Assembly (NCBI RefSeq): GCF_006345805.1
Contig: NC_043018.1
Coordinates: forward strand, 12,214,001-12,278,000
DNA from: Octopus sinensis
Taxonomy: Eukaryota
DNA: 64,000 nt
Direction of reading: 5' to 3'
Part shown: one piece after another, positions 3,601 through 60,894 of the stretch
Layout: the number at the start of each line of letters is the position of its first letter
Position numbering within the stretch: the stretch's first letter is position 1
Translations under genes and position numbers: made by a program
The notes under the pieces: generated by a model
Told to the model about the DNA's origin: nothing
Seen by the model: the letters and a program-made list of their open reading frames with translations, nothing else
Databases searched by the model: none

Positions 3601-6600
3601 GTTAGAGGGCTCGCACTTTCTATGGTCATTCAAAACCGTCCAAGGGTGGTTGTGCACATCTTTACATTTCCCCAGTCACCCAACAAAGCCATTAAAAAAT
3701 CAATAGAAATGACTTTTTTGTGAATTTTCTATCCAAAACCCAATCAAAATGCCCGAAACCTGATACGCCAATTGAATACCAGCTAGCTGTGTGTGATTGG
3801 TTGGAGATTTGGACAGTACTCACGTGTATGTGCACACACACGCAGCTGTATATGCAAGCACTAGCACTATGACCTGGCGTTGCCGGGTCATAGTGATAGT
3901 ATATGTATATATGATTATATATATATATGACGGGCTTCTTTCAATTTCTGTCTACCAAATCTACTCACAAGGTTTTGGTCGGCTCATGGCTATAGAAGAC
4001 AGTTGTCCAAGGTACCACGCAGTGAGATTGAACCCGGAAGTACGTGGTTGGGAAGCAAGCTCCTTGTGTGTAATACAATAATGGTGATGTTCTCAACTGT
4101 TATATGGGAATGTAAATATGTTTGCAAATTGTTTTTGTTAATATTATTCTGTGTTCTGAATACATTTATTTTAATCAATGTTGCTTACTTCAAGTTATGG
4201 ATGATTCTTTTATGATTTCATTGCTTTCATGTAATCAACTTGCCTTCCCCTCAAAAATACTAGCGCTGTGCCAAAATCTGAAACTGGTATTATTAAGTTC
4301 CCACCAGTTTTTGGAAATTTATAAAAACAAAGATTACCTTTAATATTTTTTGGTACTGTCCAGCAGCCAAAGAGTTACTGTTCACAGGACTTGAAACAAA
4401 TAACTAAAAAATAGAATGAAATGAAAGGCCATTTGTAAGAAGTGGGATAAAAGGTTATGTGGTAAGTGAAGTTGGTGGGGAGAGTAGAAATAGCGAAAAA
4501 AGAAATAAAGTGAAAAAAAAAGGATGTTGAGAAGTAGAAAGGGAAATAGAGGCAATTGAGGTGTTGATGAGGCAAAAGTACAGAGAAATGTAAGGATTAT
4601 TAATCAATGGGTAAGTGGGAATGAAAAGTTGAAACATTAGAAGGCTCCGAATTTAAAATGGTCATAGACATTTCAGAGACAGAGAGATCAATAGATAGAT
4701 CCGTTTCCTTGTCAATATCATCAGCTGACTGACCACTAACACAATCAAGTCTCTCTCTGTGCTTGTCTGACTCTTTTCCACAACTTATTTACTATTCTTT
4801 TTAAAAGCTGTAGTAAGCACACTCAAAGCGTGACTGATTTTCAATCAACAATTTTGGATTCATTTGAATTTTCACTGACATCAGTCAAAGAATATGACTT
4901 GTAGTTGTTGAGCATCGTTGCTTAGGTTTCTCTTGACACCAACACATCTGTGAACTACTTTGATCTGATTCCAAAGATTACTACAAGACCCTTGGTCAGA
5001 CTATTGCTGACATGACAAACTACAGGTTACAACTTTTCATATTAGGAATCCCAAAGAATTCCAAGTTTGAATCACAGCAGAGATCTGCTACAGACTGTTT
5101 TCAGTTGAACTCACAAAATACATTGAGGCAATAAGTACCAAACGGCGGTTCACAGGTTTGTTAAAGCAATGGTGAACTCAAAAAGGAATATTAGAAAAGG
5201 AAGGAAGGCAGAGAAGAGGGAAAGAGTGAAAGCAAGAGGGAAAGGAAAGAAAAGAAAGGAAGAAAGAAAGGAAAGAAGAAAGGATTGAATAAAGGAGGTA
5301 AATAAGAGGTTTATATACTAACTTGTTGCAGATATGTTACCATATCTTTAATCTCGGTAGAAAGTGTTACTTGACCAGTTTTTGGTGGGGGGGTCCATTC
5401 TGATGACTTAGACTCTTCATAATCCATTGCAAAATCTTCTGATCAACGAAAAAAAACAAAAAAACAACAGTTCACCAGATAAAAAAAAGTAACAAAACTC
5501 ACACAACAAATTCTCTAAACAATTACCAGACAATAAATGACAGAAACACAGACATCCATACAAAGCACGTAGTCTTACTTTTATTGATCCCGAAAGGACG
5601 ATAGTCAAAGCGCCCTTACCTTGTGATGACATATAACTGACCCCCAATACTACGACACATACTATACTCCACCAACAATTCATGTAACACGTATACTATA
5701 AAATTACAAGGCACTAAAACACAATAAACCAGCCAGTCGTCTGATCACCTGTCAATCTGGTAGGTACAATAAACAAATGGACTCCATCCTCATCAAAAAC
5801 AGGGACAGGTAGATGCTTGCATATGGGAAGTCCTTCCTTGGTGAAGAATATAAAACCCAAAATAGATTAGTTTCTTCAGAATAAGAACTAGGAAACCCAA
5901 ACACAGAAACTAGTTCAGAAATTGAAGATATGGAAGCTTTAAGAATCATTGAACAGTCAGAGATTAAGAGACGCTCTAATTGAAGAATTGGAGACACGTA
6001 ACAGGAGAAAAGAGAATATTCTTGCAGGACTGGAAAAATGGATGCAGTAGAGAATTATACCAGGTAGCTAGAAGAGAAGCTAGGTGAGAGAAGCAGAAAG
6101 GAAGAGATTTGCCAATGTTCTACAGCACGAGAACCAGAAGCATGAGGTATGCCAGATTGCAAGACAATGAATCAAAGAAGAATGAAGACATCGTGGCAGA
6201 GAAACGTGTAGAGAAAGGATAAAAAGTAGAGTTGCAGTTAGGAAGGAGGCATGGAATTTATACCATTAAATGTGGAGAATAGATGGGTGAAAGAGCAAGT
6301 TCCTAATGTGAAGGATATGAAAACAAGGAAAGCCCTTGATCTACCAGGAATTATCACTAAGATGCTTAAACAATCAGTTGAAATAGGATACAGTAAAGTC
6401 ACCTGTATAATTAATCAGGAAGGTATCATACCTAGCAACTGGTATGGCAGCCGTACAGTCAACTGTTGCAAGGGTAAAGGAGAGAAGTAACCATGGAGGC
6501 ATCAAGCTGCTGGACTGAAGCATGAATGTGACAGAAAGGGTTGCAGAGAGTTAATCTAGATGAGACGTAGTTCGGTTTCGTGCCAGGGAGAAATGCTATT

Positions 6601-47830: not shown

Positions 47831-49092
47831 ACACACACACACACACATACATACACATGAGGGGGGGGTGCTGAAAAGTTCATGGCTTTAGAGGTATCGT
47901 GAAAGACCTGGCTGGAGGCAGAACCTTCCAAGTTCTTTAACAGGGCTTAGAAAAACTGAAAGACCACTGCAATAAGTGTGTGGATCCGAAAGAATTTGTT
48001 GAATAAAATCAACAGATTTTCAGATATATAATAAGACATTAAAAGGATTTGAAAAAGAAAAGTAAATATTGTTTCTAAGGGGGTAACACAGTATATCTGT
48101 AATAATAATATTAATAATTGAATTAAACACTGAAAAAAATCTGAACGAATTGTCATGAGGATTAGAAGAAAAAAGAAGCAATCTAAAACCACCACAGGAG
48201 TAGAATAGAGAAGCCAGTCTAAACTATTTAAAATTTATATGGAAAATTTTATATGAAGAATACATAAGCCTCCTCTCTCACACACACACACTGTTTCTCA
48301 CCCCCTATCAACACATACACACGTCCATTTCCTCTGTCATTTTATGCTGCCTTTAAAGAAAATGTACATTTCCAGCCTCAAAAATAAATTTAAAAATTTT
48401 ACGAAATTTACCTAACGCTGTATTTTAATTTATGACTTTTCCGTGGTTATATCGAAGGACTGCCATCGCTGGCAATCTTTCTGTGGGGGACAGAGACCGT
48501 AAAATATTAAAAGTAGGAATTAGAATAGCAAAAGACGAAAGAAAATAGAAAACCCTGTTCTTTCATTCATATATCAAGGCGCGCGCATGCATCGCACTTG
48601 CCGTGCAATGTGTAATATTAAATATAAAAATGCATGTCAACTTCCACAGCAATACAAAATCACATGTGGACTCATGTTTACATGTATAACTATAAATATG
48701 GAAGTAATAACTGCAAGTATCAATAAAGCAGAATGAAAGAGTCCCCTCGAATATTCTGCGATAAAGTTGATGATAAGATTTTAACATTCGGAGCTTGAGA
48801 CATTCGTTGTCATAAAAAGAAGAGCTTTTTGAAGCTTACAAGTTGAAATGTCTGCAATATGCGACCCTAACACTTTGGTTTATGAACGATAGTTTGACAC
48901 CCATTAAATGTTGGGAACTCATTAGGATAGGGACGGAGGGGGGGGAGGGAATAGTGGAAACCACAGAAACGAATAAAGTTATGTGTGTATATATTGCAGA
49001 TTTCAAGATAAGTGTCGCAGAAAAACAAACGGAATGAAGAATTTCGGGAGAATACCTTTGCTTTTGCCCCTTTTGCCGCTGCCGGGCTTCAT
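526..49092 (-). CDS. INTS1: Integrator complex subunit 1, spliced CDS of 32 exons in window, 3' part beyond window start
   Basis: Manual exon assembly gives a 1415-codon open frame with GT-AG introns and consistent phases. Peptides match INTS1 as I recall it: PPPGDFIALG, SINFKAKGNPLVSVLACN, LEMWLQNPKL, NELSSARNPNNM, WWLHTVVPS, LCRSRNPDFLLDIIQRQ, SMPWLAELVES, LLLPDWLKLRMIRS, FVQSFGIPVSSM. Confidence 0.95.
2285..2338 (-). CDS. INTS1: INTS1 exon 31
   Basis: cttcag acceptor; SLTSSNEVALNITKALSL; donor TTG|GTAAGT. Confidence 0.72.
3538..3899 (+). mobile_element. Non-autonomous Helitron
   Basis: A|TC..TCTATATATAAAA 5' end, (GT)-rich subterminal segment, 3' hairpin ending (C>A)TAG|T. Confidence 0.7.
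3918..4078 (-). mobile_element. SINE family B, head half (tRNA-like head plus CORE-like domain)
   Basis: Reverse complement of head ...gcttgcttcccaaccacgtacttccgggttcaatctcactgcgtggtaccttggacaactgtcttct. Other partial copies at ~9139-9290, 22620-22720, 43045-43190. Confidence 0.75.
4338..4403 (-). CDS. INTS1: INTS1 exon 30
   Basis: ttttag acceptor; LFVSSPVNSNSLAAGQYQKILK; donor AAG|GTAATC; weak homology. Confidence 0.7.
5323..5438 (-). CDS. INTS1: INTS1 exon 29 (divergent linker)
   Basis: Polypyrimidine tract then cag acceptor; EDFAMDYEESKSSEWTPPPKTGQVTLSTEIKDMVTYLQQ; phase 1 to 0 bridges exons 28 and 30; weak homology. Confidence 0.75.
6040..6960 (+). mobile_element. Degenerate RTE-clade LINE reverse transcriptase
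   Basis: Frameshifted FGFVPGR..DAIF, VHQGSVLSP.LFIIVLQAI and YAD(D)L-like motifs. Confidence 0.75.
7355..7609 (-). CDS. INTS1: INTS1 exon 28
   Basis: LQDLDPAQLFLFVQSFGIPVSSMTKLLKYLDHAV...QHTRGAEGGHVF...NEE; donor G|GTCAGT. Confidence 0.95.
7926..8087 (-). CDS. INTS1: INTS1 exon 27
   Basis: GETYYEELLKIWFPEEGSPPNAFLLDTSEEALLLPDWLKLRMIRSSIERLIDA; donor G|GTAAGT. Confidence 0.95.
8479..8590 (-). CDS. INTS1: INTS1 exon 26
   Basis: SNTQDQIILQWESGDSATMLVLVVHAMIILLTYGPPK; donor G|GTATAG. Confidence 0.93.
9830..9994 (-). CDS. INTS1: INTS1 exon 25
   Basis: EVAQLIVERTTVMSHVVPP...LSLYTKYIRRAKEPDKEAYDW; donor GTAAGA. Confidence 0.92.
10741..10845 (-). CDS. INTS1: INTS1 exon 24
   Basis: ACRVETDPTLVSAYVIFLDRHVKDVSLQNLDDLAF; donor GTAAGT. 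Confidence 0.92.
11587..11769 (-). CDS. INTS1: INTS1 exon 23
   Basis: GLSLVVSMSH...HKWLLLYLPSLPLFDSLRTQACYAIRK; donor AAG|GTAAGT. Confidence 0.92.
12540..12689 (-). CDS. INTS1: INTS1 exon 22
   Basis: KMKKQEQLLAKLQMLV...FEVMDYFFKRLSSSQASSRSLAIK; donor AAG|GTAGGT. Confidence 0.93.
12900..13835 (+). mobile_element. Mariner (DD34D-type) transposase pseudogene with right TIR
   Basis: GFHKVCARW, RIVTGDEMWVHHY, KVLLTLFWDSKG, LLHDDACPH, EHPAYSLDLGPSDYH; stops and frameshifts; ends ...ttactttccctcatg|TA. Confidence 0.9.
13904..14056. mobile_element. Tc1/mariner MITE, 153 bp
   Basis: 26-bp TIRs (T/C)AGTTGTGGCCAAAAGTTTGGAACAT, 1 mismatch, flanked by TA. Confidence 0.9.
14218..14382 (-). CDS. INTS1: INTS1 exon 21
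   Basis: GTTQSMPWLAELVESNEGSLDVLPVQCLCEFLLHD...KQKKR; donor GTCAGT. Confidence 0.95.
16359..16488 (-). CDS. INTS1: INTS1 exon 20
   Basis: GSLRKPPSTVIEQLVTLNQNLKIGQRLCRSRNPDFLLDIIQRQ; donor CAG|GTAAAT. Confidence 0.95.
18024..18148 (-). CDS. INTS1: INTS1 exon 19
   Basis: LYEKEKHEILEFESHLAAATSKITITESNSLLLSQLTTMD; donor GTAAGT. Confidence 0.93.
20354..20429 (-). CDS. INTS1: INTS1 exon 18
   Basis: NYKFPPPTTATEEKHIEEIKNHEKQ; donor CAG|GTATGT. Confidence 0.88.
20945..21165 (+). mobile_element. SINE family A (tRNA-like head, GCCTTTCATCCTTTCGGGGTCGATAAA domain)
   Basis: A-box/B-box-like TGGCAGAATCGTTAG / GTTCAAATTCC. Copies at 27089-27324(-, 20-bp TSD TCTGTGTGTCTTCACACTGA), 30347-30562(+), 49968-50234(+), 63110-63545(+, dimeric), partial 8200-8330. 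Confidence 0.85.
21630..22030 (-). mobile_element. RTE LINE 3' fragment
   Basis: QERRLHWYVHVARMDEDSCVKKC...GRGRPRKTWDEVVKHDL. Confidence 0.85.
22515..22575 (-). CDS. INTS1: INTS1 exon 17
   Basis: QTAWENYPILKCLMEMAMT; donor AA|GTAAGT. Confidence 0.92.
22740..23456 (-). mobile_element. Gypsy LTR retrotransposon pol fragment (RNase H end to integrase)
   Basis: RHLDLISQFSTDIQH...ADALS; HIDLVRPWPVSHGFSYILTCIDGFS; same family as 51140-53523. Confidence 0.85.
23620..23711 (-). CDS. INTS1: INTS1 exon 16
   Basis: YTPPTLAISALYWKAWNMLLIIVAFNPSTFG; donor G|GTGAGT. Confidence 0.93.
23792..24224 (+). mobile_element. SINE family B, full length with internal (TA)n
   Basis: tRNA-like head, GGCACCTTGGGCAAGTGTC CORE-like motif, microsatellite, second domain, tail ...ggccacagtcaaatgactgaaac. 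Full copies also at 29116-29495(-), 35183-35563(+), 61870-62251(-). Confidence 0.85.
25493..25710 (-). mobile_element. SINE family F fragment
   Basis: Aligns by eye with 32070-32390, which retains a minus-strand tRNA-like head. Confidence 0.7.
25710..25875 (+). mobile_element. LTR retrotransposon gag N-terminal fragment
   Basis: FLESFPAEPPTTDESKLRCLIEHTYKDVYELISECENYLEAIQTLERLYAKP resembles Gypsy gag starts. Confidence 0.6.
26025..26121 (-). CDS. INTS1: INTS1 exon 15
   Basis: VEVLRVTRLEFVDALMNLCAYRHPENIVLPKG; donor GG|GTGAGA. Confidence 0.93.
27749..27906 (-). CDS. INTS1: INTS1 exon 14
   Basis: LMLRIASEVPVLEDTLMRVLVIGLSRELSLSSADAVELADQLIKRAA; donor G|GTAGGA. Confidence 0.95.
28716..29073. 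mobile_element. Tc1/mariner-like MITE with ~88-bp imperfect TIRs
   Basis: TA|CAGGGTGATTCGAAAG...; 28716-28803 is reverse complement of 28984-29073 at roughly 80% by eye. Confidence 0.75.
29613..29690 (-). CDS. INTS1: INTS1 exon 13
   Basis: LHKVLFMESTEHYHNKDNWPLESDR; donor GC|GTAAGT. Confidence 0.92.
30950..31780 (-). mobile_element. Degenerate RTE LINE RT fragment
   Basis: Reverse complement has MQFGFVPG-like motif and GVHQG.ILNP motif. Confidence 0.7.
32070..32390 (-). mobile_element. SINE family F
   Basis: Minus head tggctcaatgattagagc...gagttcaattcccgaacc followed by CORE-like segment. Confidence 0.75.
32904..33024 (-). CDS. INTS1: INTS1 exon 12
   Basis: LEILHQYQQQVTLIQRDSVWWLHTVVPSIVEMKPHEYVHC; AG/GT borders. 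Confidence 0.93.
33180..33600 (+). mobile_element. Degenerate RTE LINE RT fragment
   Basis: VHQGS..SPLLFII, ITEEFETRCPWEHLYADD. Confidence 0.75.
34688..34910 (+). mobile_element. Chimeric SINE: family B head joined to family C tail
   Basis: B head to ...ctatagcctcggg, then gttaggcatggcatccaacc...acattgatgatgac. Confidence 0.7.
34936..35044 (-). CDS. INTS1: INTS1 exon 11
   Basis: ERYVLAITDLITLTILVGITPSVREAFGNLARGDRK; donor G|GTTAGT. Confidence 0.92.
35771..37016 (+). mobile_element. Tc1/mariner superfamily DD37D (maT-type) transposon, degenerate
   Basis: TA|CAGGGTGTCCCGAAAATAAGGCAGCC left TIR; partial right TIR ~36998-37016; VFTDEKKF, MVWAAVT, QQD-x37-D in NPLDFSV; frameshifted. Confidence 0.85.
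37285..37850 (+). mobile_element. Internally deleted mariner with both TIRs
   Basis: TIRs TTGGGCTGTCCGGAAAGTTCGTGCCAATTT / rc TGAGGTTGTCCGGAAAGTTTGTGCCGATTT, TA flanks; MEDKKVHFRH start abutting HPPYSPDIAPSDFHLF...WRCIVQQNGSY C-terminus. Confidence 0.9.
37986..38168 (-). CDS. INTS1: INTS1 exon 10
   Basis: ILAEIFQDLLVNKEDYLRALRALFREIVRSLRHDLNFVAFCLGLMQ...QAFK; donor GTAAGT. Confidence 0.95.
38760..38901 (-). CDS. INTS1: INTS1 exon 9
   Basis: ELLSQNSENLRMILTQTIYNELSSARNPNNMALLGVICQSSPETSAR; donor GTAAGT. Confidence 0.93.
40043..40188 (-). CDS. INTS1: INTS1 exon 8
   Basis: LSRSAQDLLLSVCLNC...IRLKTKPLINHYLSSLR; donor CG|GTAAGA. Confidence 0.93.
40580..41075 (-). mobile_element. RTE LINE 3' remnant
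   Basis: Similar to 21630-22030 (catgctacatggtagtgaaac motif on minus strand). Confidence 0.6.
41085..41345 (+). mobile_element. SINE family E
   Basis: B-box-like ggtttcaattcccagac; shares tttattgagcaaaaa..cctaaa..gctccatgaggctc with 61486-61847. Confidence 0.7.
41438..41624 (-). CDS. INTS1: INTS1 exon 7
   Basis: YVYQQEMIESDVLEIVREQLNKRQP...RLEMWLQNPK; AG/GT borders. Confidence 0.95.
42230..42332 (-). CDS. INTS1: INTS1 exon 6
   Basis: cctcag acceptor; SSPSLSVCEEEDK...SPITPR; donor AG|GTGAGA; phase 1 to 2 fits neighbours. Confidence 0.85.
43293..43455 (-). CDS. INTS1: INTS1 exon 5
   Basis: VYVEDSLGEHNWVDREECKIFVDNILTAFNTKTP...; donor T|GTAAGT. Confidence 0.93.
44909..45046 (-). CDS. INTS1: INTS1 exon 4
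   Basis: AFCSLLKRDVSINFKAKGNPLVSVLACNILMAAYSEDDNWPDDFVK; AG/GT borders. Confidence 0.95.
45182..45375 (-). CDS. INTS1: INTS1 exon 3
   Basis: ttcag acceptor; DAADFLTEVQ...GLLCGAVKSLRANRSKPDPCLYLSL...LVTE; donor GTGAGT. Confidence 0.93.
45576..46984 (+). mobile_element. Helitron remnant with Pif1-family helicase C-terminus (INTS1 intron 2)
   Basis: A|TCTATATCTATAAAA 5' end; RAILAPCN, FPTEFLNSL.PSGMPPH, IMLLRNLDPPCLCNGTRL, FIPRIPLIPSDLPFEFKQLQFP.KLSFAM.INKSQG, SHGQLYV; frameshifts. Confidence 0.9.
47192..47467 (-). CDS. INTS1: INTS1 exon 2
   Basis: tttgcag acceptor; LPPPGDFIALGKQ...EESAIE; donor G|GTCAGT. Confidence 0.9.
47856..48010 (+). mobile_element. Mariner MITE fragment
   Basis: TIR-like catgaggggggggtgctgaaaagttc followed by transposase C-terminal LEKLKDHCNKCV remnant. 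Confidence 0.6.
49056..49092 (-). CDS. INTS1: INTS1 exon 1 (start codon; MKPGSGKRGKSK)
   Basis: ATG at 49092-49090; donor G|GTATT; phase 1 joins exon 2 to give ...KSKALPPPGDFIALG. Confidence 0.75.
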
Positions 49093-49429
49093 TGTCTGTT
49101 ATTAAAGTTATTTTCACAAGAAGAAACAAAAAAACTACTTGCTATATATGTATAATATATATATATATATATATACGGAGGGAGAAAGAGAGAAGGAAAG
49201 AGATTAAATAATTAATGCTGCATCAACAATTCTGTGTTTAAGGAAGAAATCGATTTTTCCGACTTTTGAAACATTTTCCAGAATTGGATCAAATGAGAAA
49301 TAAGAGTTTCCTTCTAAGGGACATAACTCTTGTCACGGCTAAACACCGGTGAAGCACCAAAATAGTTGAACACCAAAATCTAATGTCGGAATTTAATTTC
49401 AGTATTTGGAAATAATTTAATTGTTGCTC

Positions 49430-49920
49430 TTGTTTAGCCGGAAGTTAAAGTAAACGTTAACCATTTTGGGCGTAACTTCGGTATACGTACCGGAAGTACC
49501 AGATACATTTCAAGAAAGTGTTTTTTTTTTTATATATATGGAGGGGTTAGGGTTAGGGTTAGGATTAGGGGCGGGAGAAAAGGGTTTCTGTTATCTTCAG
49601 AAGTGTAAACAAAGGCACTTCCGGTACAAAGGTACCTATACCGAAGGATTGAACAAGCTATGATCAAAAACGTTCTGTCCGTGACTTTCTATTTACCCCC
49701 GTATGAAGTCTATAGGATTTACATTAAGACCGTGGACCGTACATATTTGATCGACTACGCTGAGGTTATCTCGTGTATTTCCAAGTTTATTGTTGTGGTT
49801 AACATGCAGTTTGCAGTCATAAATCAGGGAAAGTAAATTGTCTTCAAAAAATGAAATTATATTGCGATAGAAATCGGAAGTGACAACTGTGACTCGCCGT
49901 CATTTTGTGTAAACAATGAA
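49430..49920 (-). promoter_or_regulatory. Probable INTS1 promoter/TSS region
   Basis: CpG-enriched island 0.35-0.8 kb upstream of the ATG. CCGGAAGT ETS motifs at 49438 and 49490, ACTTCCGG at 49617, CGGAAGTG near 49876; YY1-like CAAAATGG/CAAAATGACGGCG on the minus strand. Confidence 0.6.
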
Positions 49921-50234
49921 TGTGACAGACTCAATATTTATAATTATGTATATTTAATAACGAATGAAGGCGGCGAACTGGCAGAATCGTTAGCACACCG
50001 GGAGAAACGCTACGCGGTATTTCGTCTGCTGCTACGTTCTGAGTTCAAATTCCGCCGAGGTCGACTTTAGCTTTCATCCTTTGGACGTCGATAAATTAAG
50101 TACCAGTTACGCACTGGGGTCGATGTAATCGACTTAATACCTATGTCTGTCCTTGTTTGTCCCCTCTGTGTTTAGCCCCTTGTGGGTAGTAAAGAAATAG
50201 GTATTTCGTCTGCTGCTACGTTCTGAGTTCAAAT

Positions 50235-51135
50235 GCTGTGTGCGTTCCTTTTCTTTCCGATCGTCTTCTAGGAATCGTTTTAGGCATCGTTCTTCTTCTC
50301 GCCAGCGTGCCATTACTTCGCTCGACACACCGTGTTGGTACTGTCGACGATTTGGGGATAAGGCACATCAGTGTAGACAGCCTTGCTCTTACTCTCCGCA
50401 GGGAAACTAGACGGGGGGGGGGACCCTGAGCACGTCAGCCGTCCCCCTTGCTTCGTTCTACTCCTCATCGTTTATTTTTTTTTTAGAGACGTCAACTCCT
50501 CTAAGCTTTTCGTGGTCGACACAGGAGCCGGCGTCAGTATTTGGCCCTTATGTTTCACCTCGACTAGGCCTATGTTGTTAACCACTCTACTATCCGGACC
50601 TACGGACAGATTTCTATATCTCTGGATTTATCTCTATGTAGAGATTTTAAATGGATTTTCGTCATCGCGGATTTGCCTTATCCAATATTGGGTGCGTTCT
50701 TTCTACACCATTACTCATTATTTGGTTGATGTGAGAATGCAGCGGCTTCTCGACGATACCACCTCCTTATCAATTCCTACGAAGATCTCGACTGTCGCTC
50801 CTGTGGGTCCCTCTTTCTTCGTTGCCTCTTCAAGATACCCGTACCACGCATTGCTTGCTTCTTTTCCAGAGCTTACTGATTTGTTATTTAAACCAACCGA
50901 GCCTGTTCATTCAACGAGATACTTCCCCTCCACGAAAAGACCTCTTGTTTTTTCTCATCCGCGACAGTTGGCACCGGACAAGCTTAAGGCAGCTCGAGTT
51001 GAATTTGAACAAATGCTCCAAGTTGGTCTTATTTCACCATCCACAAGCCCATGGGCGTCACCTTCACACATGGCAAGCAAAAAAGGTTCCGCAGAACTTC
51101 CGAGCAGTTGTGGGATTTCAGACGCCTCAATGCTG
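50235..51135 (+). mobile_element. Gypsy element: LTR-like segment, protease, start of RT
   Basis: FVVDTGAGVSI protease motif; RQLAPDKLKAARVEFEQML...SPWASP; truncated. Confidence 0.85.
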
Positions 51136-51139
51136 GAAC

Positions 51140-53523
51140 AACAGAAGAAATAGACTGGTCACTAGGGGCCATGGATGGCAGACCCGAGAAGTAAGAACGA
51201 AGTCTGGTGATGTACGACGTAGGACCGGGTGCGGTGAGTCGACTGGTGCCAACATTTAGCCAGGAAGTGCCAAAGTGGTATCGTACAAGAGTTCAGCAAC
51301 CTAGAATGATAGGAAGAAATTCGGTCCATCATTGTGGATCTGGGGTAACGCGAAGTGCAGCTTTCAACTGCTTATGTAATCTTTCCACCATTCCATTCGA
51401 AGCTGGGTAGTAACTAGTCGTATTAATGACAATTCACGGAAAAGGCTTCGAACTGGCGCCCACGATCAGTGGTGATTCTGGAAGGGACGCCAAATCGAGC
51501 AATCCACCCTGAGATGAGAGCTCGAGCGACAAGTTTGGCGGTAATATCTATCAGGGGTATGACCTCTAGTCATCGGAAGAACCGATCAATACAGGTCAAA
51601 ATGTATGTGAAACCGGAACTGATGGGCCAAGGACCAACGAGATCAACATGGATGTGCCGGAAGCGAGTGACCGGCGGATTGAACTGTCCCAATGGAGCAC
51701 AGACGTGCCTATGCACCTTGGAGTGCTGGCACTGCAAACAAGAACGCGCCCAAGTGGTGATTGTACGACGCCAGAAGAATCGGGATGTGACAACGAATGC
51801 AGAGCGTCGAAGATGGTGTGGCGATGACGATCAGGAACGAGCGGTCTGGGTGAATCGGTGGAAACATCGCAGGGATGTTCTCCTCAGCGGACGGTAGTGG
51901 CGGGTACTCAAACTTGTAGCAGGAAAACTGAGCAGAAGAAATGTCGAGCGAATTCAAGAAAGGCGGGTCTGAAGCATTGGCAACCAGATCAATCGTAGCA
52001 GGAGACAAAAGGGAACACAGAGGAAGCCTAGACAAAGCATCAGTAGATATATTGGCAGATCCAGCAATATGGCGTATATCACTGGTGAACTGAAAAATGA
52101 AGTACAGGTTTCTGTATGTCCTCGGTGAGTTATTCTCCGACTTAGATTGTAGCGCGAATGTGAGCGGTTTATGGTCCGTGAATAACCTGAACTTCCGACC
52201 TTCAAGGAGATGGTGGAAGTGCCTCACAGCAAGATAATCAGCTAACAGCTCTCTATCAAAAGTGCTATACTGTTGTTCGTCTGATCTCAGTTGGCGTAAG
52301 AAAAACGCTAGTTGTTGAGTCTGGTGGTTGATCGGTTGATCGTCTGTTGCAATACAGCGCCAACAGCACAATTTGAGGCAGCAACGGTTAAGGATAGTTC
52401 TGCGTTCGCAATAGGATGAGAGGCGAGCAAGGAAACTTGAGCAAGATGAGATTTGACGGATTCAAAAGACTGCAATGCGTCGGAAGAAAGAGAAATCGGA
52501 GAATCTTTCTGATTCTTGTTCTTCAAATGCTGAGTCAAGGGAAACAACTCGTTCGCACAGTTAAGAATGAAGCGACAATAGAAGTTGATTAACCCAAGGA
52601 AATGACATAACTGTTTCAATGAAGTGTGGGGGGGGGGGTGAAACTTGCTGAATCGCTTCCTACTTCGCCGACAGAGGCCGAATGCCTTCAGATTCTATAA
52701 GATGTCCCAGGAACTCCAACGAAGTTGTACCAAACACACATTTTGCAGGGTTGACCGTAAAATTGTACCACCGGAGACGCTGGAACAACTGTGATATGTG
52801 TTGATGATGTTCAGCTGTATCAGTGGATATGAGAAGGTTGTCCACGTAAGCAAAAACGAAATCCATTCCATGAACGACTTCATTCATAAACCGCTGGAAA
52901 CCGGCATTGCGCAATCCAAATGACATGGATAAGAACTCGAACGAGTCAAATTGAGTGGTCACGACTGTTTTTGGGATGTCTGCTGGGTTCACTGGTATTT
53001 GGTGGTATTTACGTATCAGGTCAATATCGGAAAAGACGGTGCATCCATGTAAAGCAGATGAAAAATCCTGAAGATGAGGTAAAGGATATCTGTCAGGGGT
53101 AGTGACGGCATTGAAGCGTCTGAAATCATCAACCAGTCGGAAGTCTCCAGTACCCTTTTTTGCCATGTGTAAAGGAGACGCCCATAGGTTCGTGGATGGT
53201 CGAATAAGTCCAAGCTGGAGCATATGTTCAAATTCAGTTCGAGCTGCCTTAAGCTTGTCCGGTGCCAACCGTCGTGGACGGGAAAAACAGGATGTCCCTT
53301 TGTGGAGATGAAATGTCTCGTTGAGTGAATAGGATCGGTTGGTTTAAACGACAAATCAGTAAGCTCCGGAATAAGAAGCAAGCAATGCGTGATACGGCAA
53401 CGAAGAAAGAGGGACTCATAGGAGCGACAGTAGAAATCTTCGTAGGAATTGATAAGGAGATGGTATCGTCGAGAAGCTGCTGCAGTCTCACATCAACCAA
53501 ATAATGAGTAATGGTGTAGAAAG
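51140..53523 (-). mobile_element. Gypsy pol pseudogene (RT, RNase H, integrase), CsRn1-like by recall
   Basis: WASPLHM, DRYPLPHLQDF, FAYVDNLLI, FLGLINFY, YSTFDRELLA, TDHKPL, SADALSR, HVDLVGP; stops and frameshifts. Confidence 0.92.
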
Positions 53524-53874
53524 TCAGCTCCCAACATTAGCAGTCAATACAGCTCCTAGCAGAATGTATCTGGTTTTTGACATGCATAATGAAAATGCAG
53601 ACACGTTTCACTATTATTAAACTTCCGCGGTGAAGAGTTCAGCTACTGTCTATATTTCGCTGAGAAGCTCTAATAAACCTGAAACATGTCAGCATCCGCC
53701 ACCGTTCTTGCCAAAGTTAATGTTGACATATTTAATATAGTGAACATCAAAAATCTAATCGGAAATATTTATGGAGTGAAGAAAAAGCGACATTAGTTTT
53801 TCACTTTCTCCCCTCGGACTCAGAAGCCCTAAAAATGGTCAAAGGTGCAGCTTTCCCTTTTATGACTAAGCCAT

Positions 53875-54401
53875 TTAAAAAAAAAAACAACCTTTTCTAC
53901 GTTGATAGATTCAGCCATCACGTCCCTACCAAAGCATGTAGAATCTTATTCGTATGTATTTGTCGCATTAGTGTGTCAGATGAAATAAATATTTAGAAAT
54001 TTAATTACATCACACAATTAAACGGATTAAAATGAGCACAAAATTATCTTCATAAAATAAAATTGATAAGATACTTTTTAATTAACATCAGAAACAGGAA
54101 TTGTTTATAAAGGTGCGTTATTTAATTTTTCTTTTTTGAAGTCGAGAATCCATAGAAAAAACAAAAGAGAGAGAGAGAGAAGGAGTGTTATGTGACGCTA
54201 TTTGAGGTTGAATCGATCAGCTTTTCCTCTTCGAAAGGCTATCATAGAATAGTGAGTTGGTGCCGAGAATGCAGATAAAGAGTAGAAGATAAAAGGTGTA
54301 AAAAGAAGTGAAGGAAAAGGAAGGATAAAAAACTCGGAGATAAAGAAAGAGATTTGGCAGAACGAGGTTAAAAAGGAAATATTAAGGTCTTGTGAGATAT
54401 T

Positions 54402-54462
<61 letters not shown>

Positions 54463-55296
54463 AGAGAGAGATTGAGAGAGAGAGAGAGACTAATGTCGAG
54501 TATGCTGGAGAGATCGCGATTAATATTATGAGGAGAAAGAAGGATTAAAAGGAAAGTGGTTAAAAAAAGGGGGGGGAGGCAGATTTAAGAGAAAATGGAA
54601 AGAAGAGGAGGAGGAAGAATTGAATAAGAAAACCAGAAAAGGAATATAAGAAAAAGGAGTGAACGAGTTAAATAAAAGAATAATTATCAGATGTATAGAG
54701 AATGAGGGAGGGAGAGAGAGAGAGAGAGAGAGAGTCATAGAGAGGGAGGCGCAGAAAGAGAGAGAAAAGTTAAAAAAAAAAACAACCTTTTCTACGTTGA
54801 TAGATTCAGCCATCACGTCCCTACCAAAGCATGTAGAATCTTATTCGTATGTATTTGTCGCATTAGTGTGTCAGATGAAATAAATATTTAGAAATTTAAT
54901 TACATCACACAATTAAACGGATTAAAATGAGCACAAAATTATCTTCATAAAATAAAATTGATAAAATACTTTTTAATTAACATCAGAAACAGGAATTGTT
55001 TATAAAGGTGCGTTATTTAATTTTTCTTTTTTGAAGTCGAGAATCCATAGAAAAAACAAAAGAGAGGGAGAGAGAAGGAGTGTTATGTGACGCTATTTGA
55101 GGTTGAATCGATCAGCTTTTCCTCTTCGAAAGGCTATCATAGAATAGTGAGTTGGTGCCGAGAATGCAGATAAAGAGTAGAAGATAAAAAGTGTAAAAAG
55201 AAGTGAAGGAAAAGGAAGGATAAAAAACTCGGAGATAAAGAAAGAGATTTGGCAGAACGAGGTTAAAAAGGAAATATTAAGGTCTTGTGAGATATT

Positions 55297-55361
<65 letters not shown>

Positions 55362-55688
55362 AGAGAGAGATTGAGAGAGAGAGAGAGACTAATGTCGAGT
55401 ATGCTGGAGAGATCGCGATTAATATTATGAGGAGAAAGAAGGATTAAAAGGAAAGTGGTTAAAAAAAAGGGGGGGGGGGCAGATTTAAGAGAAAATGGAA
55501 AGAAGAGGAGGAGGAAGAATTGAATAAGAAAACCAGAAAAGGAATATAAGAAAAAGGAGTGAACGAGTTAAATAAAAGAATAATTATCAGATGTATAGAG
55601 AATGAGGGAGGGAGAGAGAGAGAGAGAGAGAGAGAGTCATAGAGAGGGAGGCGCAGAAAGAGAGAGAAAAGTTTAAAAAAAAAAAACA
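53875..55688. repeat. Tandem duplication of ~895-900 bp unit
   Basis: 53875-54769 and 54770-55672 differ by only a few substitutions and by (GA)n/homopolymer lengths; TTAAAAAAAAAAACA at all three junctions. Confidence 0.95.
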
Positions 55689-56354
55689 GGACGAGTTGTT
55701 TGATAAACACCATAAAATGGAGATTAAACAATTAAAAAAGAAATTCATATGAAATGCATAAGAGAGGAGGTGTTTTAAAAAAGGAGGGAAGATTGCTTTT
55801 TGATAGAAAGAGCTAATGTTACTGTTTTGTCCGAAGTCGGACTGAACAAACAGGTTTTGATTAGAATCTCTAATCAAATATGATCGTTTTCTTTTCTAGG
55901 CCAAAATATTTAACGTATCCTTCTCTTTTAAGGCAACAGGGTGTGACCCGAGGGTGGTTTTTATTGGCATTTCTCGGAGGTTAGACGACCACACAATGAA
56001 TCCGACTGTTATAAGGAAAGGTATGACGAAGATAAGAAATGGTGTAAACAAAAAAGAGGACACATCAGAGAGAAAGAGTAAGTACGAGAGGAAGAAGCAT
56101 TGGAGAGAAAGAAGCTATATTAAGAGAAGATGGTAACGCACTTGAGTGCGTGTGTGTTGTGCATGGAGGAGAAGAGATTTCAAGCGGAACAGGAGAGGGA
56201 GAAAGAGTGAGAGAAAGAGTTGGGTAAAAAGGGAGAGGGTGAAAAAGAGAGAGTGAAGAAGAACTGTTCCGAAGCAGAGTAGTAGTCGGAGGAAGGGTAG
56301 GAGTAAGGAGTTTTAGAGAGAATAGGTAAAGTAAAGAGGAGAGACATAAAGAGC

Positions 56355-58248: not shown

Positions 58249-58334
58249 ATCTAACTATATGTATATATATATATATATACACACACACACAAACACACAC
58301 ACATATATATACACATGTATATGTAGTATATATA

Positions 58335-58378
<44 letters not shown>

Positions 58379-58449
58379 ACACACACACACACACACATAT
58401 ATACTATATATATATACTACATATATATATATTACATATATATATATAT

Positions 58450-58498
<49 letters not shown>

Positions 58499-58565
58499 CA
58501 GGTGGTGCTATTAAGTTAGACATGGCCTGGGCCAACAATGGCCGAAACCTATCAAAGTATCAAAG

Positions 58566-58597
<32 letters not shown>

Positions 58598-58830
58598 CAC
58601 ATATATATATATATATACTACATATATATATATATACTACATATATATATATATATACACATATATATATATATACTACATATATATATATATATATATA
58701 CTACATACATATATATATATATATATACTACATATATATACATACATATATATATATACACACATATATATACTACATATATGTATGTATATATATATAT
58801 ATTTATAAAACATATAACTAATAACTAGAT
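58100..58830. repeat. Compound microsatellite array (CA)n/(TA)n/(TCTA)n/(TCTG)n
   Basis: Direct reading. Many smaller arrays elsewhere, e.g. (GA)n 7294-7327, (GAT)n 38586-38635, (AAAAAGTACC)x4 29917-29957. Confidence 0.95.
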
Positions 58831-60719: not shown

Positions 60720-60894
60720 AAGAAAAGAAAAGAAAAGAAAAGAAGAGCCTCGAGAAGAAGGTGAAAGGCTTAATACATTTAAATCATACCATTTTGCTTT
60801 TTTTTTTACTCAACGTTCCGATAAGTAAAATGGTATGATTTAAATGTATTAAGCCTTTCACCTTCTTCTCGAGGTTCTTCTTCTTTTCTTTTCT
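60720..60894. repeat. Long inverted repeat (hairpin)
   Basis: 60748-60795 is the exact reverse complement of 60827-60874 (48 bp), extended by (AAAAG)n/(CTTTT)n flanks. Confidence 0.95.

What the first reader, a model, noticed from the sequence alone, without database searches (positions are those of the whole stretch)
49430..49650. INTS1 promoter built around a MITE-like inverted repeat enclosing a telomeric TTAGGG tract and donating ETS sites
Seen: left arm CTTCGGTATAC-GTACCGGAAGTACC (49476-49500) and right arm (49614-49646; rc CTTCGGTATAGGTACCTTT-GTACCGGAAGTGCC) are inverted copies. Each arm carries a perfect ETS motif CCGGAAGT, with a third at 49438. Between them lies GGGG-TTA-GGG-TTA-GGG-TTA-GGA-TTA-GGGG-C-GGG (49543-49575), a telomere-type G-quadruplex-competent tract. 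A YY1-like CAAAATGG follows the left arm on the minus strand. Established: ETS plus YY1 motifs typify housekeeping promoters. Inference: a ~170-bp foldback element was exapted as core promoter of an essential gene, combining ETS sites with a G4/telomere-binding-protein site.
Basis: partly seen in the sequence, partly recalled or inferred. Interest (0 to 1): 0.7.

Follow-up and report, generated by a model that had tools for sequence, protein, structure and literature searches.

The report
Species-specific palindromic insert upstream of INTS1
A 178-base palindromic DNA piece carrying two ETS binding sites and a short telomere-type repeat lies upstream of the octopus INTS1 gene, but a sister species lacks it, so it is a recent add-on to an older promoter, not its core.

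Summary
The window is Octopus sinensis. INTS1 is on the minus strand, with its ATG at 49092.

**What is there**
- Inverted arms at 49476-49500 and 49614-49646 match at 23 of 25 bases, with one 8-nt indel.
- Each arm holds a CCGGAAGT site.
- Between them lie T11, (TA)4 and 4.5 TTAGGG units, the only such tract in 64 kb.

**New evidence**
- O. vulgaris carries the same unit, with one hexamer fewer.
- O. bimaculoides lacks exactly 178 bp (49469-49646), with clean flanks. One end of this indel is the tip of an arm.
- The piece therefore behaves as one discrete insert.

**What is not supported**
- MITE membership is not shown. There is no target-site duplication, 7 extra bases lie outside one arm, and no second copy was found in about 390 kb.
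- "Core promoter built around it" is not supported. O. bimaculoides keeps two ETS sites outside the unit (49438, 49875). Argonauta has its own ETS/CRE cluster. No relative has the telomeric tract.
- A G-quadruplex needs a 9-nt loop.
- The YY1-like motif is weak and belongs to the ancestral flank.
- The transcription start site is unknown.

The unit is most likely an accessory or neutral addition to an existing ETS-type promoter. Interest is modest.

The parts
49469..49646 (.). 178-bp lineage-specific unit. Present in O. sinensis and O. vulgaris, absent from O. bimaculoides. The junction is ambiguous by 1 nt.
   Evidence: Alignments of the orthologous upstream regions. L001 9447-9624 has no counterpart in L002, and both flanks abut at L002 9496.
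49476..49500 (+). Left inverted-repeat arm, CTTCGGTATACGTACCGGAAGTACC. It is preceded by 7 inserted bases (GGCGTAA) that are not part of the repeat.
49614..49646 (-). Right inverted-repeat arm (reverse complement CTTCGGTATAGGTACCTTTGTACCGGAAGTGCC). Its tip coincides with the end of the indel.
49490..49497 (+). ETS core CCGGAAGT (ACCGGAAGTA) inside the left arm, antisense to INTS1.
49617..49624 (-). ETS core CCGGAAGT (ACCGGAAGTG, a full class-I consensus) inside the right arm, in INTS1 sense orientation.
49521..49539 (+). T11 followed by (AT)4. It reads TATATATA-A11 on the INTS1 strand. It is TATA-like and a poly(dA:dT) tract.
   Evidence: Read from the sequence.
49544..49570 (+). Short interstitial telomeric tract: 4.5 GGGTTA units with one TTAGGA variant. 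G-runs continue to 49584. The G-rich strand is the template strand for INTS1.
   Evidence: O. vulgaris has one unit fewer.
49438..49445 (+). Ancestral ETS site CCGGAAGT outside the unit, conserved in O. bimaculoides. There it is the only CCGGAAGT in 72.9 kb.
49875..49882 (+). Ancestral ETS-like site CGGAAGTG outside the unit, conserved in O. bimaculoides.
49462..49469 (-). CAAAATGG (YY1-like, weak). It is ancestral flank that abuts the insertion junction and is also present in O. bimaculoides.
49056..49092 (-). INTS1 first coding exon (MKPGSGKRGKSK, then a GT donor).
   Evidence: The same N-terminus occurs in all cephalopod INTS1 proteins examined.

Best explanation
The finding is a 178-bp palindromic unit (49469-49646) that entered an already working INTS1 upstream region in the lineage leading to O. 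sinensis and O. vulgaris, after the split from O. bimaculoides.

**The older promoter.** It is CpG-rich and ETS-driven. Two ETS sites at 49438 and 49875 lie outside the unit and are shared with O. bimaculoides.

**What the unit adds.** It adds two more high-affinity ETS sites in opposite orientation, about 127 bp apart. These flank a T11/(TA)4 tract and about four TTAGGG repeats.

**Most likely effect (inferred).** The effect is quantitative or neutral. More ETS-factor input (GABP/ELK type) is plausible, and the centre disfavours nucleosomes and would keep the region open. The unit does not make the core promoter and is not required for INTS1 expression.

**Most likely origin (inferred).** One-step insertion of a short foldback DNA. 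This was either a non-autonomous transposon or a DNA fragment captured during break repair. Which of the two could not be decided here.

**Shown:** the anatomy, the presence/absence pattern, the ancestral flanking sites, and the absence of the tract in other INTS1 upstream regions.

**Inferred:** the direction of the event (insertion rather than deletion), factor binding, and any effect on transcription.
For: - The window is 100% identical to O. sinensis CM016880.1.
- INTS1 identity and its start codon are established.
- There is a clean 178-bp indel with abutting flanks, and one end lies exactly at an arm tip.
- O. vulgaris carries the unit with no substitutions. It differs only by one hexamer fewer and one base fewer in the A/T run.
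- The unit is therefore seen in two independent assemblies.
- The O. bimaculoides region has no Ns.
- The ETS sites at 49438 and 49875 are conserved in O. bimaculoides.
- Argonauta has an ETS palindrome, two CRE sites and a CCAAT box 580-710 bp upstream of its ATG.
- No telomeric tract lies upstream of INTS1 in six other molluscs.
- CpG observed/expected is 1.1-1.3 across 49000-50400, against 0.43 for the window.
- Sepia RNA contigs show a 5'UTR of at least 190 nt that is contiguous with the ATG exon. A start site a few hundred bases upstream of the ATG is therefore plausible.
Against: - No outgroup inside Octopodidae could be reached, so deletion in the O. bimaculoides lineage is not excluded.
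- No transcription start site, chromatin or binding data exist here. "Accessory or neutral" is an inference from dispensability in a sister species.
- O. sinensis and O. vulgaris are too close (98.8% identity over the 2 kb upstream) to show constraint on the unit.
- The origin is unresolved. There is no target-site duplication and no second copy, which argues against a transposon. The telomeric repeats lie 74 and about 76 nt inside the insert rather than at a junction, which argues against simple telomerase healing.
Confidence: 0.55

Rival explanations
1. One reading: a member of a dispersed MITE or foldback transposon family that was exapted as the core promoter of INTS1.
For: - The unit is bounded by inverted repeats, is small and is non-coding.
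- A related species has an empty site.
- It carries consensus ETS sites and a TATA-like tract.
Against: - There is no target-site duplication, and 7 inserted bases lie outside the left arm.
- No second copy of the unit or of either arm occurs in about 390 kb of octopod loci plus 118 kb of Sepia. This excludes only very high copy numbers, above roughly 85,000 per genome (my estimate from the amount of O. sinensis sequence held).
- Searches with translated reading frames of the unit found nothing related.
- O. bimaculoides has the gene and the flanking ETS sites without the unit, so the unit is not the ancestral core.
Confidence: 0.12
2. A short interstitial telomeric sequence inserted during repair of a double-strand break, together with filler DNA. 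This is the class described in primates, rodents and horse. Part of the filler could have been reverse-transcribed from telomerase RNA.
For: - The insertion is one-step, has an empty orthologous site and has no target-site duplication.
- It has at least 4 TTAGGG units with one mismatch.
- The literature reports such insertions with added 'apparently random' sequence, with inverted duplications, and with TERC-derived flanks (PMC7215372 read; PMC8537989 read; PMC2246262 seen only as title and abstract).
Against: - The repeats lie in the middle of the insert, not at a break end.
- The arms are not duplicates of the local flanks.
- The filler would have to be long on both sides (74 and about 76 nt) and also palindromic.
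Confidence: 0.18
3. The palindromic segment is ancestral to Octopus and was deleted as a unit in the O. bimaculoides lineage, for example by hairpin-mediated deletion or by excision.
For: - Only two states are known and no outgroup is available. Argonauta non-coding DNA does not align.
- Deletion of a palindrome at the base of its stem would also put the end points at the arm tips.
- The region is prone to indels: O. bimaculoides has its own 38-bp and roughly 146-bp extra segments.
Against: - Arms of 25-33 nt separated by 113 nt form a weak hairpin. The folding z-score is only -2.5.
- The outer arms differ by about 8% plus one indel, which is no more than the divergence between species.
- The deletion would have to be exact on one side and 7 nt off on the other.
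Confidence: 0.25

Closest known systems
Short interstitial telomeric sequences inserted at double-strand-break sites (Nergadze, Giulotto and colleagues; PMC7215372, PMC8537989, PMC2246262)
   Same: - A few TTAGGG units at an internal site.
- Present in one lineage, with a clean empty site in a relative.
- No target-site duplication.
- Repeat number varies between close relatives.
- Sometimes accompanied by extra sequence and inverted duplications.
   Different: - Here the repeats lie in the centre of a 178-bp insert, not at a break end.
- The accompanying arms are not copies of the flanks.
- The class was described in vertebrates, not molluscs.
MITE / foldback transposons that donate transcription-factor sites to promoters
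   Same: - Small, non-coding and bounded by inverted repeats.
- Presence/absence between species.
- Carries factor-binding motifs into a promoter region.
   Different: - No target-site duplication.
- One arm is not terminal.
- No family was demonstrated.
ETS (GABP/ELK-type) CpG-rich housekeeping promoters
   Same: - Clustered ACCGGAAGT sites in both orientations.
- Local relief of CpG depletion.
- An essential, broadly needed gene.
   Different: - The transcription start site was not mapped.
- Half of the ETS sites are a recent addition.
- Sepia and three non-cephalopod molluscs show no such sites within 1.5 kb of the ATG.
Telomere-repeat promoter elements (plant telo-box with TRB proteins; yeast Tbf1 sites; vertebrate TRF2 or ZBTB48 at promoter TTAGGG). 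Named from my own knowledge, plus abstracts listed.
   Same: TTAGGG-type repeats lie in a promoter-proximal position.
   Different: - Those elements recur across many promoters and are conserved.
- Here the tract is lineage-specific and absent from every other INTS1 upstream region examined.
- No binding factor is known in cephalopods.

Membership tests
MITE (miniature inverted-repeat transposable element) | Terminal inverted repeats at both ends of the inserted unit | tested here: inconclusive
   The right arm tip coincides with the indel end. The left arm tip lies 7 nt inside it, after the extra bases GGCGTAA.
MITE (miniature inverted-repeat transposable element) | Target-site duplication flanking the unit | tested here: not met
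   The empty site in O. bimaculoides reads CAAT-C-AAAATGG. Only one ambiguous C is shared, and no duplication of 2 nt or more is present.
MITE (miniature inverted-repeat transposable element) | Multiple dispersed copies in the genome | tested here: inconclusive
   There is no other copy in about 390 kb of octopod loci. Translated-frame searches were negative, as were pattern scans of metagenomes. The host genome itself could not be searched. The test has power only for families above roughly 85,000 copies (my estimate).
MITE (miniature inverted-repeat transposable element) | Small, non-coding, with presence/absence between related genomes | tested here: met
   The unit is 178 bp. It is present in O. 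sinensis and O. vulgaris and absent from O. bimaculoides.
Short interstitial telomeric sequence inserted at a double-strand break | [quoted passage not shown] | tested here: met
   O. sinensis has 4.5 units with one variant unit, TTAGGA. O. vulgaris has 3.5 units.
Short interstitial telomeric sequence inserted at a double-strand break | Orthologous empty locus in a related species (one-step insertion) | tested here: met
   O. bimaculoides is empty at the site. The direction of the event is not proven.
Short interstitial telomeric sequence inserted at a double-strand break | Telomeric repeats joined to a break end, often in register with bases at the break | tested here: not met
   The repeats lie 74 nt and about 76 nt from the two junctions.
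Short interstitial telomeric sequence inserted at a double-strand break | Flank derived from telomerase RNA (TERC-ITS subclass) | not testable with these tools
   No octopus telomerase RNA sequence was available. A paper search found none, and Rfam gave no match in 49200-50200.
ETS-type housekeeping core promoter | Consensus ETS sites clustered in a region where CpG is not depleted | tested here: met
   Three of the four CCGGAAGT copies in the window lie within 190 bp. CpG observed/expected is 1.1-1.3 against 0.43.
ETS-type housekeeping core promoter | Transcription start site within a few tens of bases of the sites | not testable with these tools
   No octopus INTS1 transcript with a 5' end was recovered. 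The gene record gives only the coding range.
Canonical G-quadruplex motif | Four G-runs of 3 or more with loops of 1-7 nt | tested here: not met
   The TTAGGA variant makes one loop 9 nt long. The tract matches only when loops up to 12 nt are allowed.
Conserved telomere-repeat promoter element (telo-box type) | Recurrence at orthologous promoters | tested here: not met
   The tract is absent upstream of INTS1 in O. bimaculoides, Argonauta, Sepia, Haliotis, Crassostrea and Pecten.

The most novel reading that the evidence does not exclude
The 178-bp unit is one copy of a dispersed family of foldback elements in the O. vulgaris species complex. Each copy would carry an ETS - (TTAGGG)n - ETS cassette, and the family would spread ready-made, bidirectional housekeeping-type promoter modules with a telomere-protein or G4 site. 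It would be a mobile promoter cassette.
Probability: 0.08. Interest if true: 0.7.

Novelty: new member of a known kind. Interest (0 to 1): 0.3.

Why it matters
If the unit changes INTS1 output, it is a natural case of a young insertion adding factor sites and a telomere-type repeat to the promoter of an essential gene. O. bimaculoides supplies a ready-made natural "deletion allele" for comparison.

It would also extend the class of one-step telomeric-repeat insertions, so far documented in vertebrates, to a mollusc.

As things stand it is a lineage-specific indel in a promoter region that is prone to indels. It has no evidence of function and does not bear on a long-standing question.

Tried and rejected
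- **Known RNA families and tRNAs.** An Rfam scan of 49200-50200 at a permissive threshold gave no match. ARAGORN found no tRNA in 48000-51000.
- **Inward extension of the arms.** A possible extension (TACATTTC..AAGA) is not above chance (489 of 2000 shuffles).
- **The 58-aa ATG ORF next to the unit (49660-49836, plus strand).** I rejected it as a gene because O. bimaculoides has a 38-bp, frame-breaking indel inside it.
- **Searches for other copies using translated frames of the unit.**
  - The 69-aa plus-strand frame gave no hit at E <= 10.
  - The 52-aa minus-strand frame gave one hit, to a 5418-aa protein with 15 matched stretches. I take this to be low-complexity LTLT-type matching; I did not inspect that protein.
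- **Exact-pattern scans of JGI metagenomes.** One scan gave 0 hits. The other gave 10 hits, none of which resembles the unit beyond the specified bases and telomeric repeats.
- **Octopod contigs through the exon 1-2 peptide.** This was meant to find an outgroup or a 5'UTR. It returned only distant hits of 42-52% identity.
- **O. bimaculoides-specific ~146-bp segment, 65 bp away.** It has no similarity to the unit and no other copy.
- **The CCGGAAGT site at 4034.** It sits between two adjacent stretches (cttctttcaatttctgtctaccaaatctactcacaagg… and …ccacgcagtgagattgaacc…) whose translations recur in ORFs elsewhere in the window, so it looks like part of a dispersed repeat. It is not a copy of the unit.
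- **A TMEM184-like divergent gene.** This gene is the head-to-head neighbour of INTS1 in Sepia. tblastn found no exon of it in the window or in any octopod locus.
- **Special conservation of the flanks.** It was not seen. Ordinary non-coding identity between O. sinensis and O. bimaculoides is 81-94%.

Full report
**Where we are.** The window is 100% identical over 5 kb to Octopus sinensis chromosome record CM016880.1. Minus-strand exons spread from about 7.3 kb to 49.1 kb encode Integrator subunit 1. A 148-residue concatenate of three exons matches human INTS1 residues 131-264 at E = 2e-56. A spliced query returns O. sinensis INTS1 as the top hit. The first coding exon is 49092..49056 (MKPGSGKRGKSK, then a GT donor). 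The gene record starts at exactly this ATG, and the same N-terminus is found in all cephalopod orthologues. The finding therefore lies 377-554 bp upstream of the INTS1 start codon. No other gene is listed in the 10 kb further upstream.

**The observation.** All the listed features are present.
- The arms at 49476-49500 and 49614-49646 match at 23 of 25 positions, with one 8-nt indel.
- The outer 16-nt block alone is reached by 6 of 1000 local dinucleotide shuffles.
- In a whole-window scan the pair ranks 11th. Most of the higher-ranked windows lie on microsatellites listed, and one holds a 70-nt inverted repeat.
- Each arm is itself nearly palindromic (CTTCGGTA..TACCGGAAG). A proposed inward extension of the arms is not above chance.
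- CCGGAAGT occurs four times in 64 kb against 0.55 expected. Three copies lie at 49438, 49490 and 49617(-). A further CGGAAGTG lies at 49875.
- The 4.5-unit TTAGGG array at 49544-49570 is the only such tract in the window.
- CpG observed/expected is 1.1-1.3 across 49000-50400, against 0.43 for the window. This fits an unmethylated promoter region, although the young repeats further upstream are also CpG-rich.

Two details need correcting. The tract fits a G-quadruplex pattern only if a 9-nt loop is allowed. CAAAATGG is a common heptamer-level match.

**The decisive comparison.** I fetched the orthologous loci of O. bimaculoides, O. vulgaris and Argonauta hians through their annotated INTS1 proteins.
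- O. vulgaris is 98.8% identical to O. sinensis over the 2 kb upstream. It carries the unit with no substitutions. It has one telomeric hexamer fewer and one base fewer in the A/T run.
- O. bimaculoides aligns on both sides but lacks exactly 178 bp. L001 9447-9624 (window 49469-49646) has no counterpart, and the flanks abut at a single ambiguous C. There are no Ns in that region.
- One end of the indel is the tip of the right arm. The other end lies 7 nt outside the tip of the left arm (GGCGTAA).
- There is no target-site duplication.

The repeat-bounded segment is therefore a discrete unit that was gained or lost as a whole.

**What belongs to the older promoter.** The ETS site at 49438, the ETS-like site at 49875 and the CAAAATGG motif all lie outside the unit. 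All three are conserved in O. bimaculoides. In that species the 49438 homologue is the only CCGGAAGT in 72.9 kb.

Argonauta non-coding DNA does not align. It nevertheless has its own cluster 580-710 bp upstream of the ATG: an ETS palindrome (CTTCCGGAAGT), a second ETS site, a CCAAT box and two TGACGTCA sites.

Sepia, Haliotis, Crassostrea and Pecten show no ETS consensus within 1.5 kb of the ATG. None of the six relatives has a telomeric tract there.

The unit therefore adds to an existing octopod ETS-type upstream region. The promoter is not built around it, and an intact INTS1 exists without it.

**Start site.** I could not map it.
- No octopus INTS1 transcript contig is in the searchable collections.
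- The genome record gives only the coding range.
- In Sepia, RNA contigs aligned to the genome show a 5'UTR of at least 190 nt, contiguous with the ATG exon.
- One 10.7-kb Sepia contig joins INTS1 head-to-head with a TMEM184-like mRNA. The first, non-coding exon of that mRNA lies within about 0.9 kb of the INTS1 ATG.

By analogy, the octopus start site plausibly lies a few hundred bases upstream of the ATG. That is near the unit, and the region may be bidirectional. This is inference only.

**Origin.** Three readings remain.
1. *A non-autonomous foldback transposon.* The shape fits. However, there is no target-site duplication, one arm is sub-terminal, and no second copy was found in about 390 kb of octopod DNA, in translated-frame searches or in metagenome pattern scans. 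By my estimate from the roughly 95 kb of O. sinensis sequence held, these tests would detect only a family above roughly 85,000 copies. The host genome could not be searched with these tools.
2. *A telomeric-repeat insertion during break repair.* This is a documented vertebrate class with empty orthologous sites, no duplication, added "random" sequence, inverted duplications and sometimes telomerase-RNA-derived flanks (PMC7215372; PMC8537989). Here, however, the repeats lie in the middle of the insert and the arms are not copies of the flanks.
3. *An ancestral palindrome deleted in O. bimaculoides.* No outgroup was available to exclude this. The region is prone to indels: O. bimaculoides has its own 38-bp and roughly 146-bp extra segments. 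The hairpin is weak, with a folding z-score of -2.5.

I favour insertion, by reading 1 or 2, over deletion at roughly 2:1.

**How it most likely works.**
- *Shown:* the unit places ACCGGAAGTG (INTS1 sense) and ACCGGAAGTA (antisense) 127 bp apart. They flank T11, (TA)4 and about four TTAGGG units, and the whole sits between two older ETS sites.
- *Inferred:* extra ETS-factor input, and a stiff centre that disfavours nucleosomes and helps keep the region open. Telomere-repeat-binding proteins might also be recruited. The G-rich strand is the template strand for INTS1.

Because the sister species does without the unit, the expected effect is a modest quantitative change or none. The repeat number already differs between O. 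sinensis and O. vulgaris, as expected for an unconstrained microsatellite-like tract.

**Verdict.**
INTS1 upstream region: yes. Insert-like unit carrying ETS sites: yes. MITE: not shown. Exapted core promoter: not supported. G4: weak.
- It is a new instance of known kinds of event, namely a lineage-specific insertion that delivers factor sites and a short interstitial telomeric sequence.
- Interest is modest (0.3). It would rise sharply only if a dispersed family of such cassettes at start sites were found.

Noticed in passing
L002 9561-9706, and a 38-bp segment near L002 9345-9382 (O. bimaculoides): O. bimaculoides has two extra segments of its own in the same INTS1 upstream region, of about 146 bp and 38 bp. 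The larger one lies 65 bp from the empty site. It is unrelated to the 178-bp unit and has no other copy in the loci held. This promoter region is an indel hot spot between species.
   Followed up: partly
window 49143-49175: A (TA)n microsatellite lies between the unit and the INTS1 ATG. Its length differs among O. sinensis, O. vulgaris (longer) and O. bimaculoides. It could act as a TATA-like element if the start site is close to the ATG.
   Followed up: no
L005 1-4190, versus L009 9081-10037 (Sepia): A 10.7-kb cuttlefish RNA contig joins INTS1 head-to-head with a TMEM184-like (PF03619) mRNA. This suggests overlapping divergent transcripts from a shared promoter. TMEM184A is also near INTS1 in human (from memory). 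No exon of this gene was found within about 15 kb upstream in O. sinensis.
   Followed up: partly
L004 9285-9425 (Argonauta hians): A compact cluster lies 580-710 bp upstream of the INTS1 ATG: an ETS palindrome (CTTCCGGAAGT), a second ETS site, a CCAAT box and two TGACGTCA sites 10 bp apart. It is followed by a GT donor-like site, which suggests a non-coding first exon.
   Followed up: no
window 49960-50150: A SINE-like repeat lies directly upstream of the unique promoter segment. Several copies at 83-88% identity occur elsewhere in the INTS1 locus, mostly in introns.
   Followed up: partly
window 50383-51153 (+) and 52660-53536 (-): Two retroelement fragments lie in opposite orientation. Their translations are closely similar (LAPDKLKAAR.EFE.MLQ.GLI...). 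Long open frames lie between them (51.7-52.7 kb); I did not identify any domains in them. The region is the most GC-rich in the window (up to 0.50).
   Followed up: no
window 54166-55700: There is a tandem duplication of about 895 bp. Each copy carries long GA microsatellites (54404-54489 / 55299-55388 and 54704-54765 / 55604-55667), and GC skew is strong (up to +0.56).
   Followed up: no
window 58256-58807: A 552-bp imperfect (TA)n array lowers GC to 0.19 in that kilobase.
   Followed up: no
window 60730-60799 / 60823-60892: This is the strongest non-microsatellite inverted repeat in the window: 70-nt arms, 91% complementary, 23 nt apart. It is a better foldback or MITE candidate than the finding itself.
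   Followed up: no
L019 1-190 (metagenome contig Ga0209144_1000975): An unidentified eukaryotic contig ends in degenerate TTAGGG repeats. Immediately before them lie two tandem copies of AACCGGAACCGGAAGTAC, so an ETS-like ACCGGAAGTAC motif sits next to a telomere. This is probably coincidence.
   Followed up: no
window 49660-49836 (+): A 58-aa ATG ORF abuts the unit. It is interrupted by a 38-bp indel in O. bimaculoides, so it is not a conserved coding sequence.
   Followed up: yes
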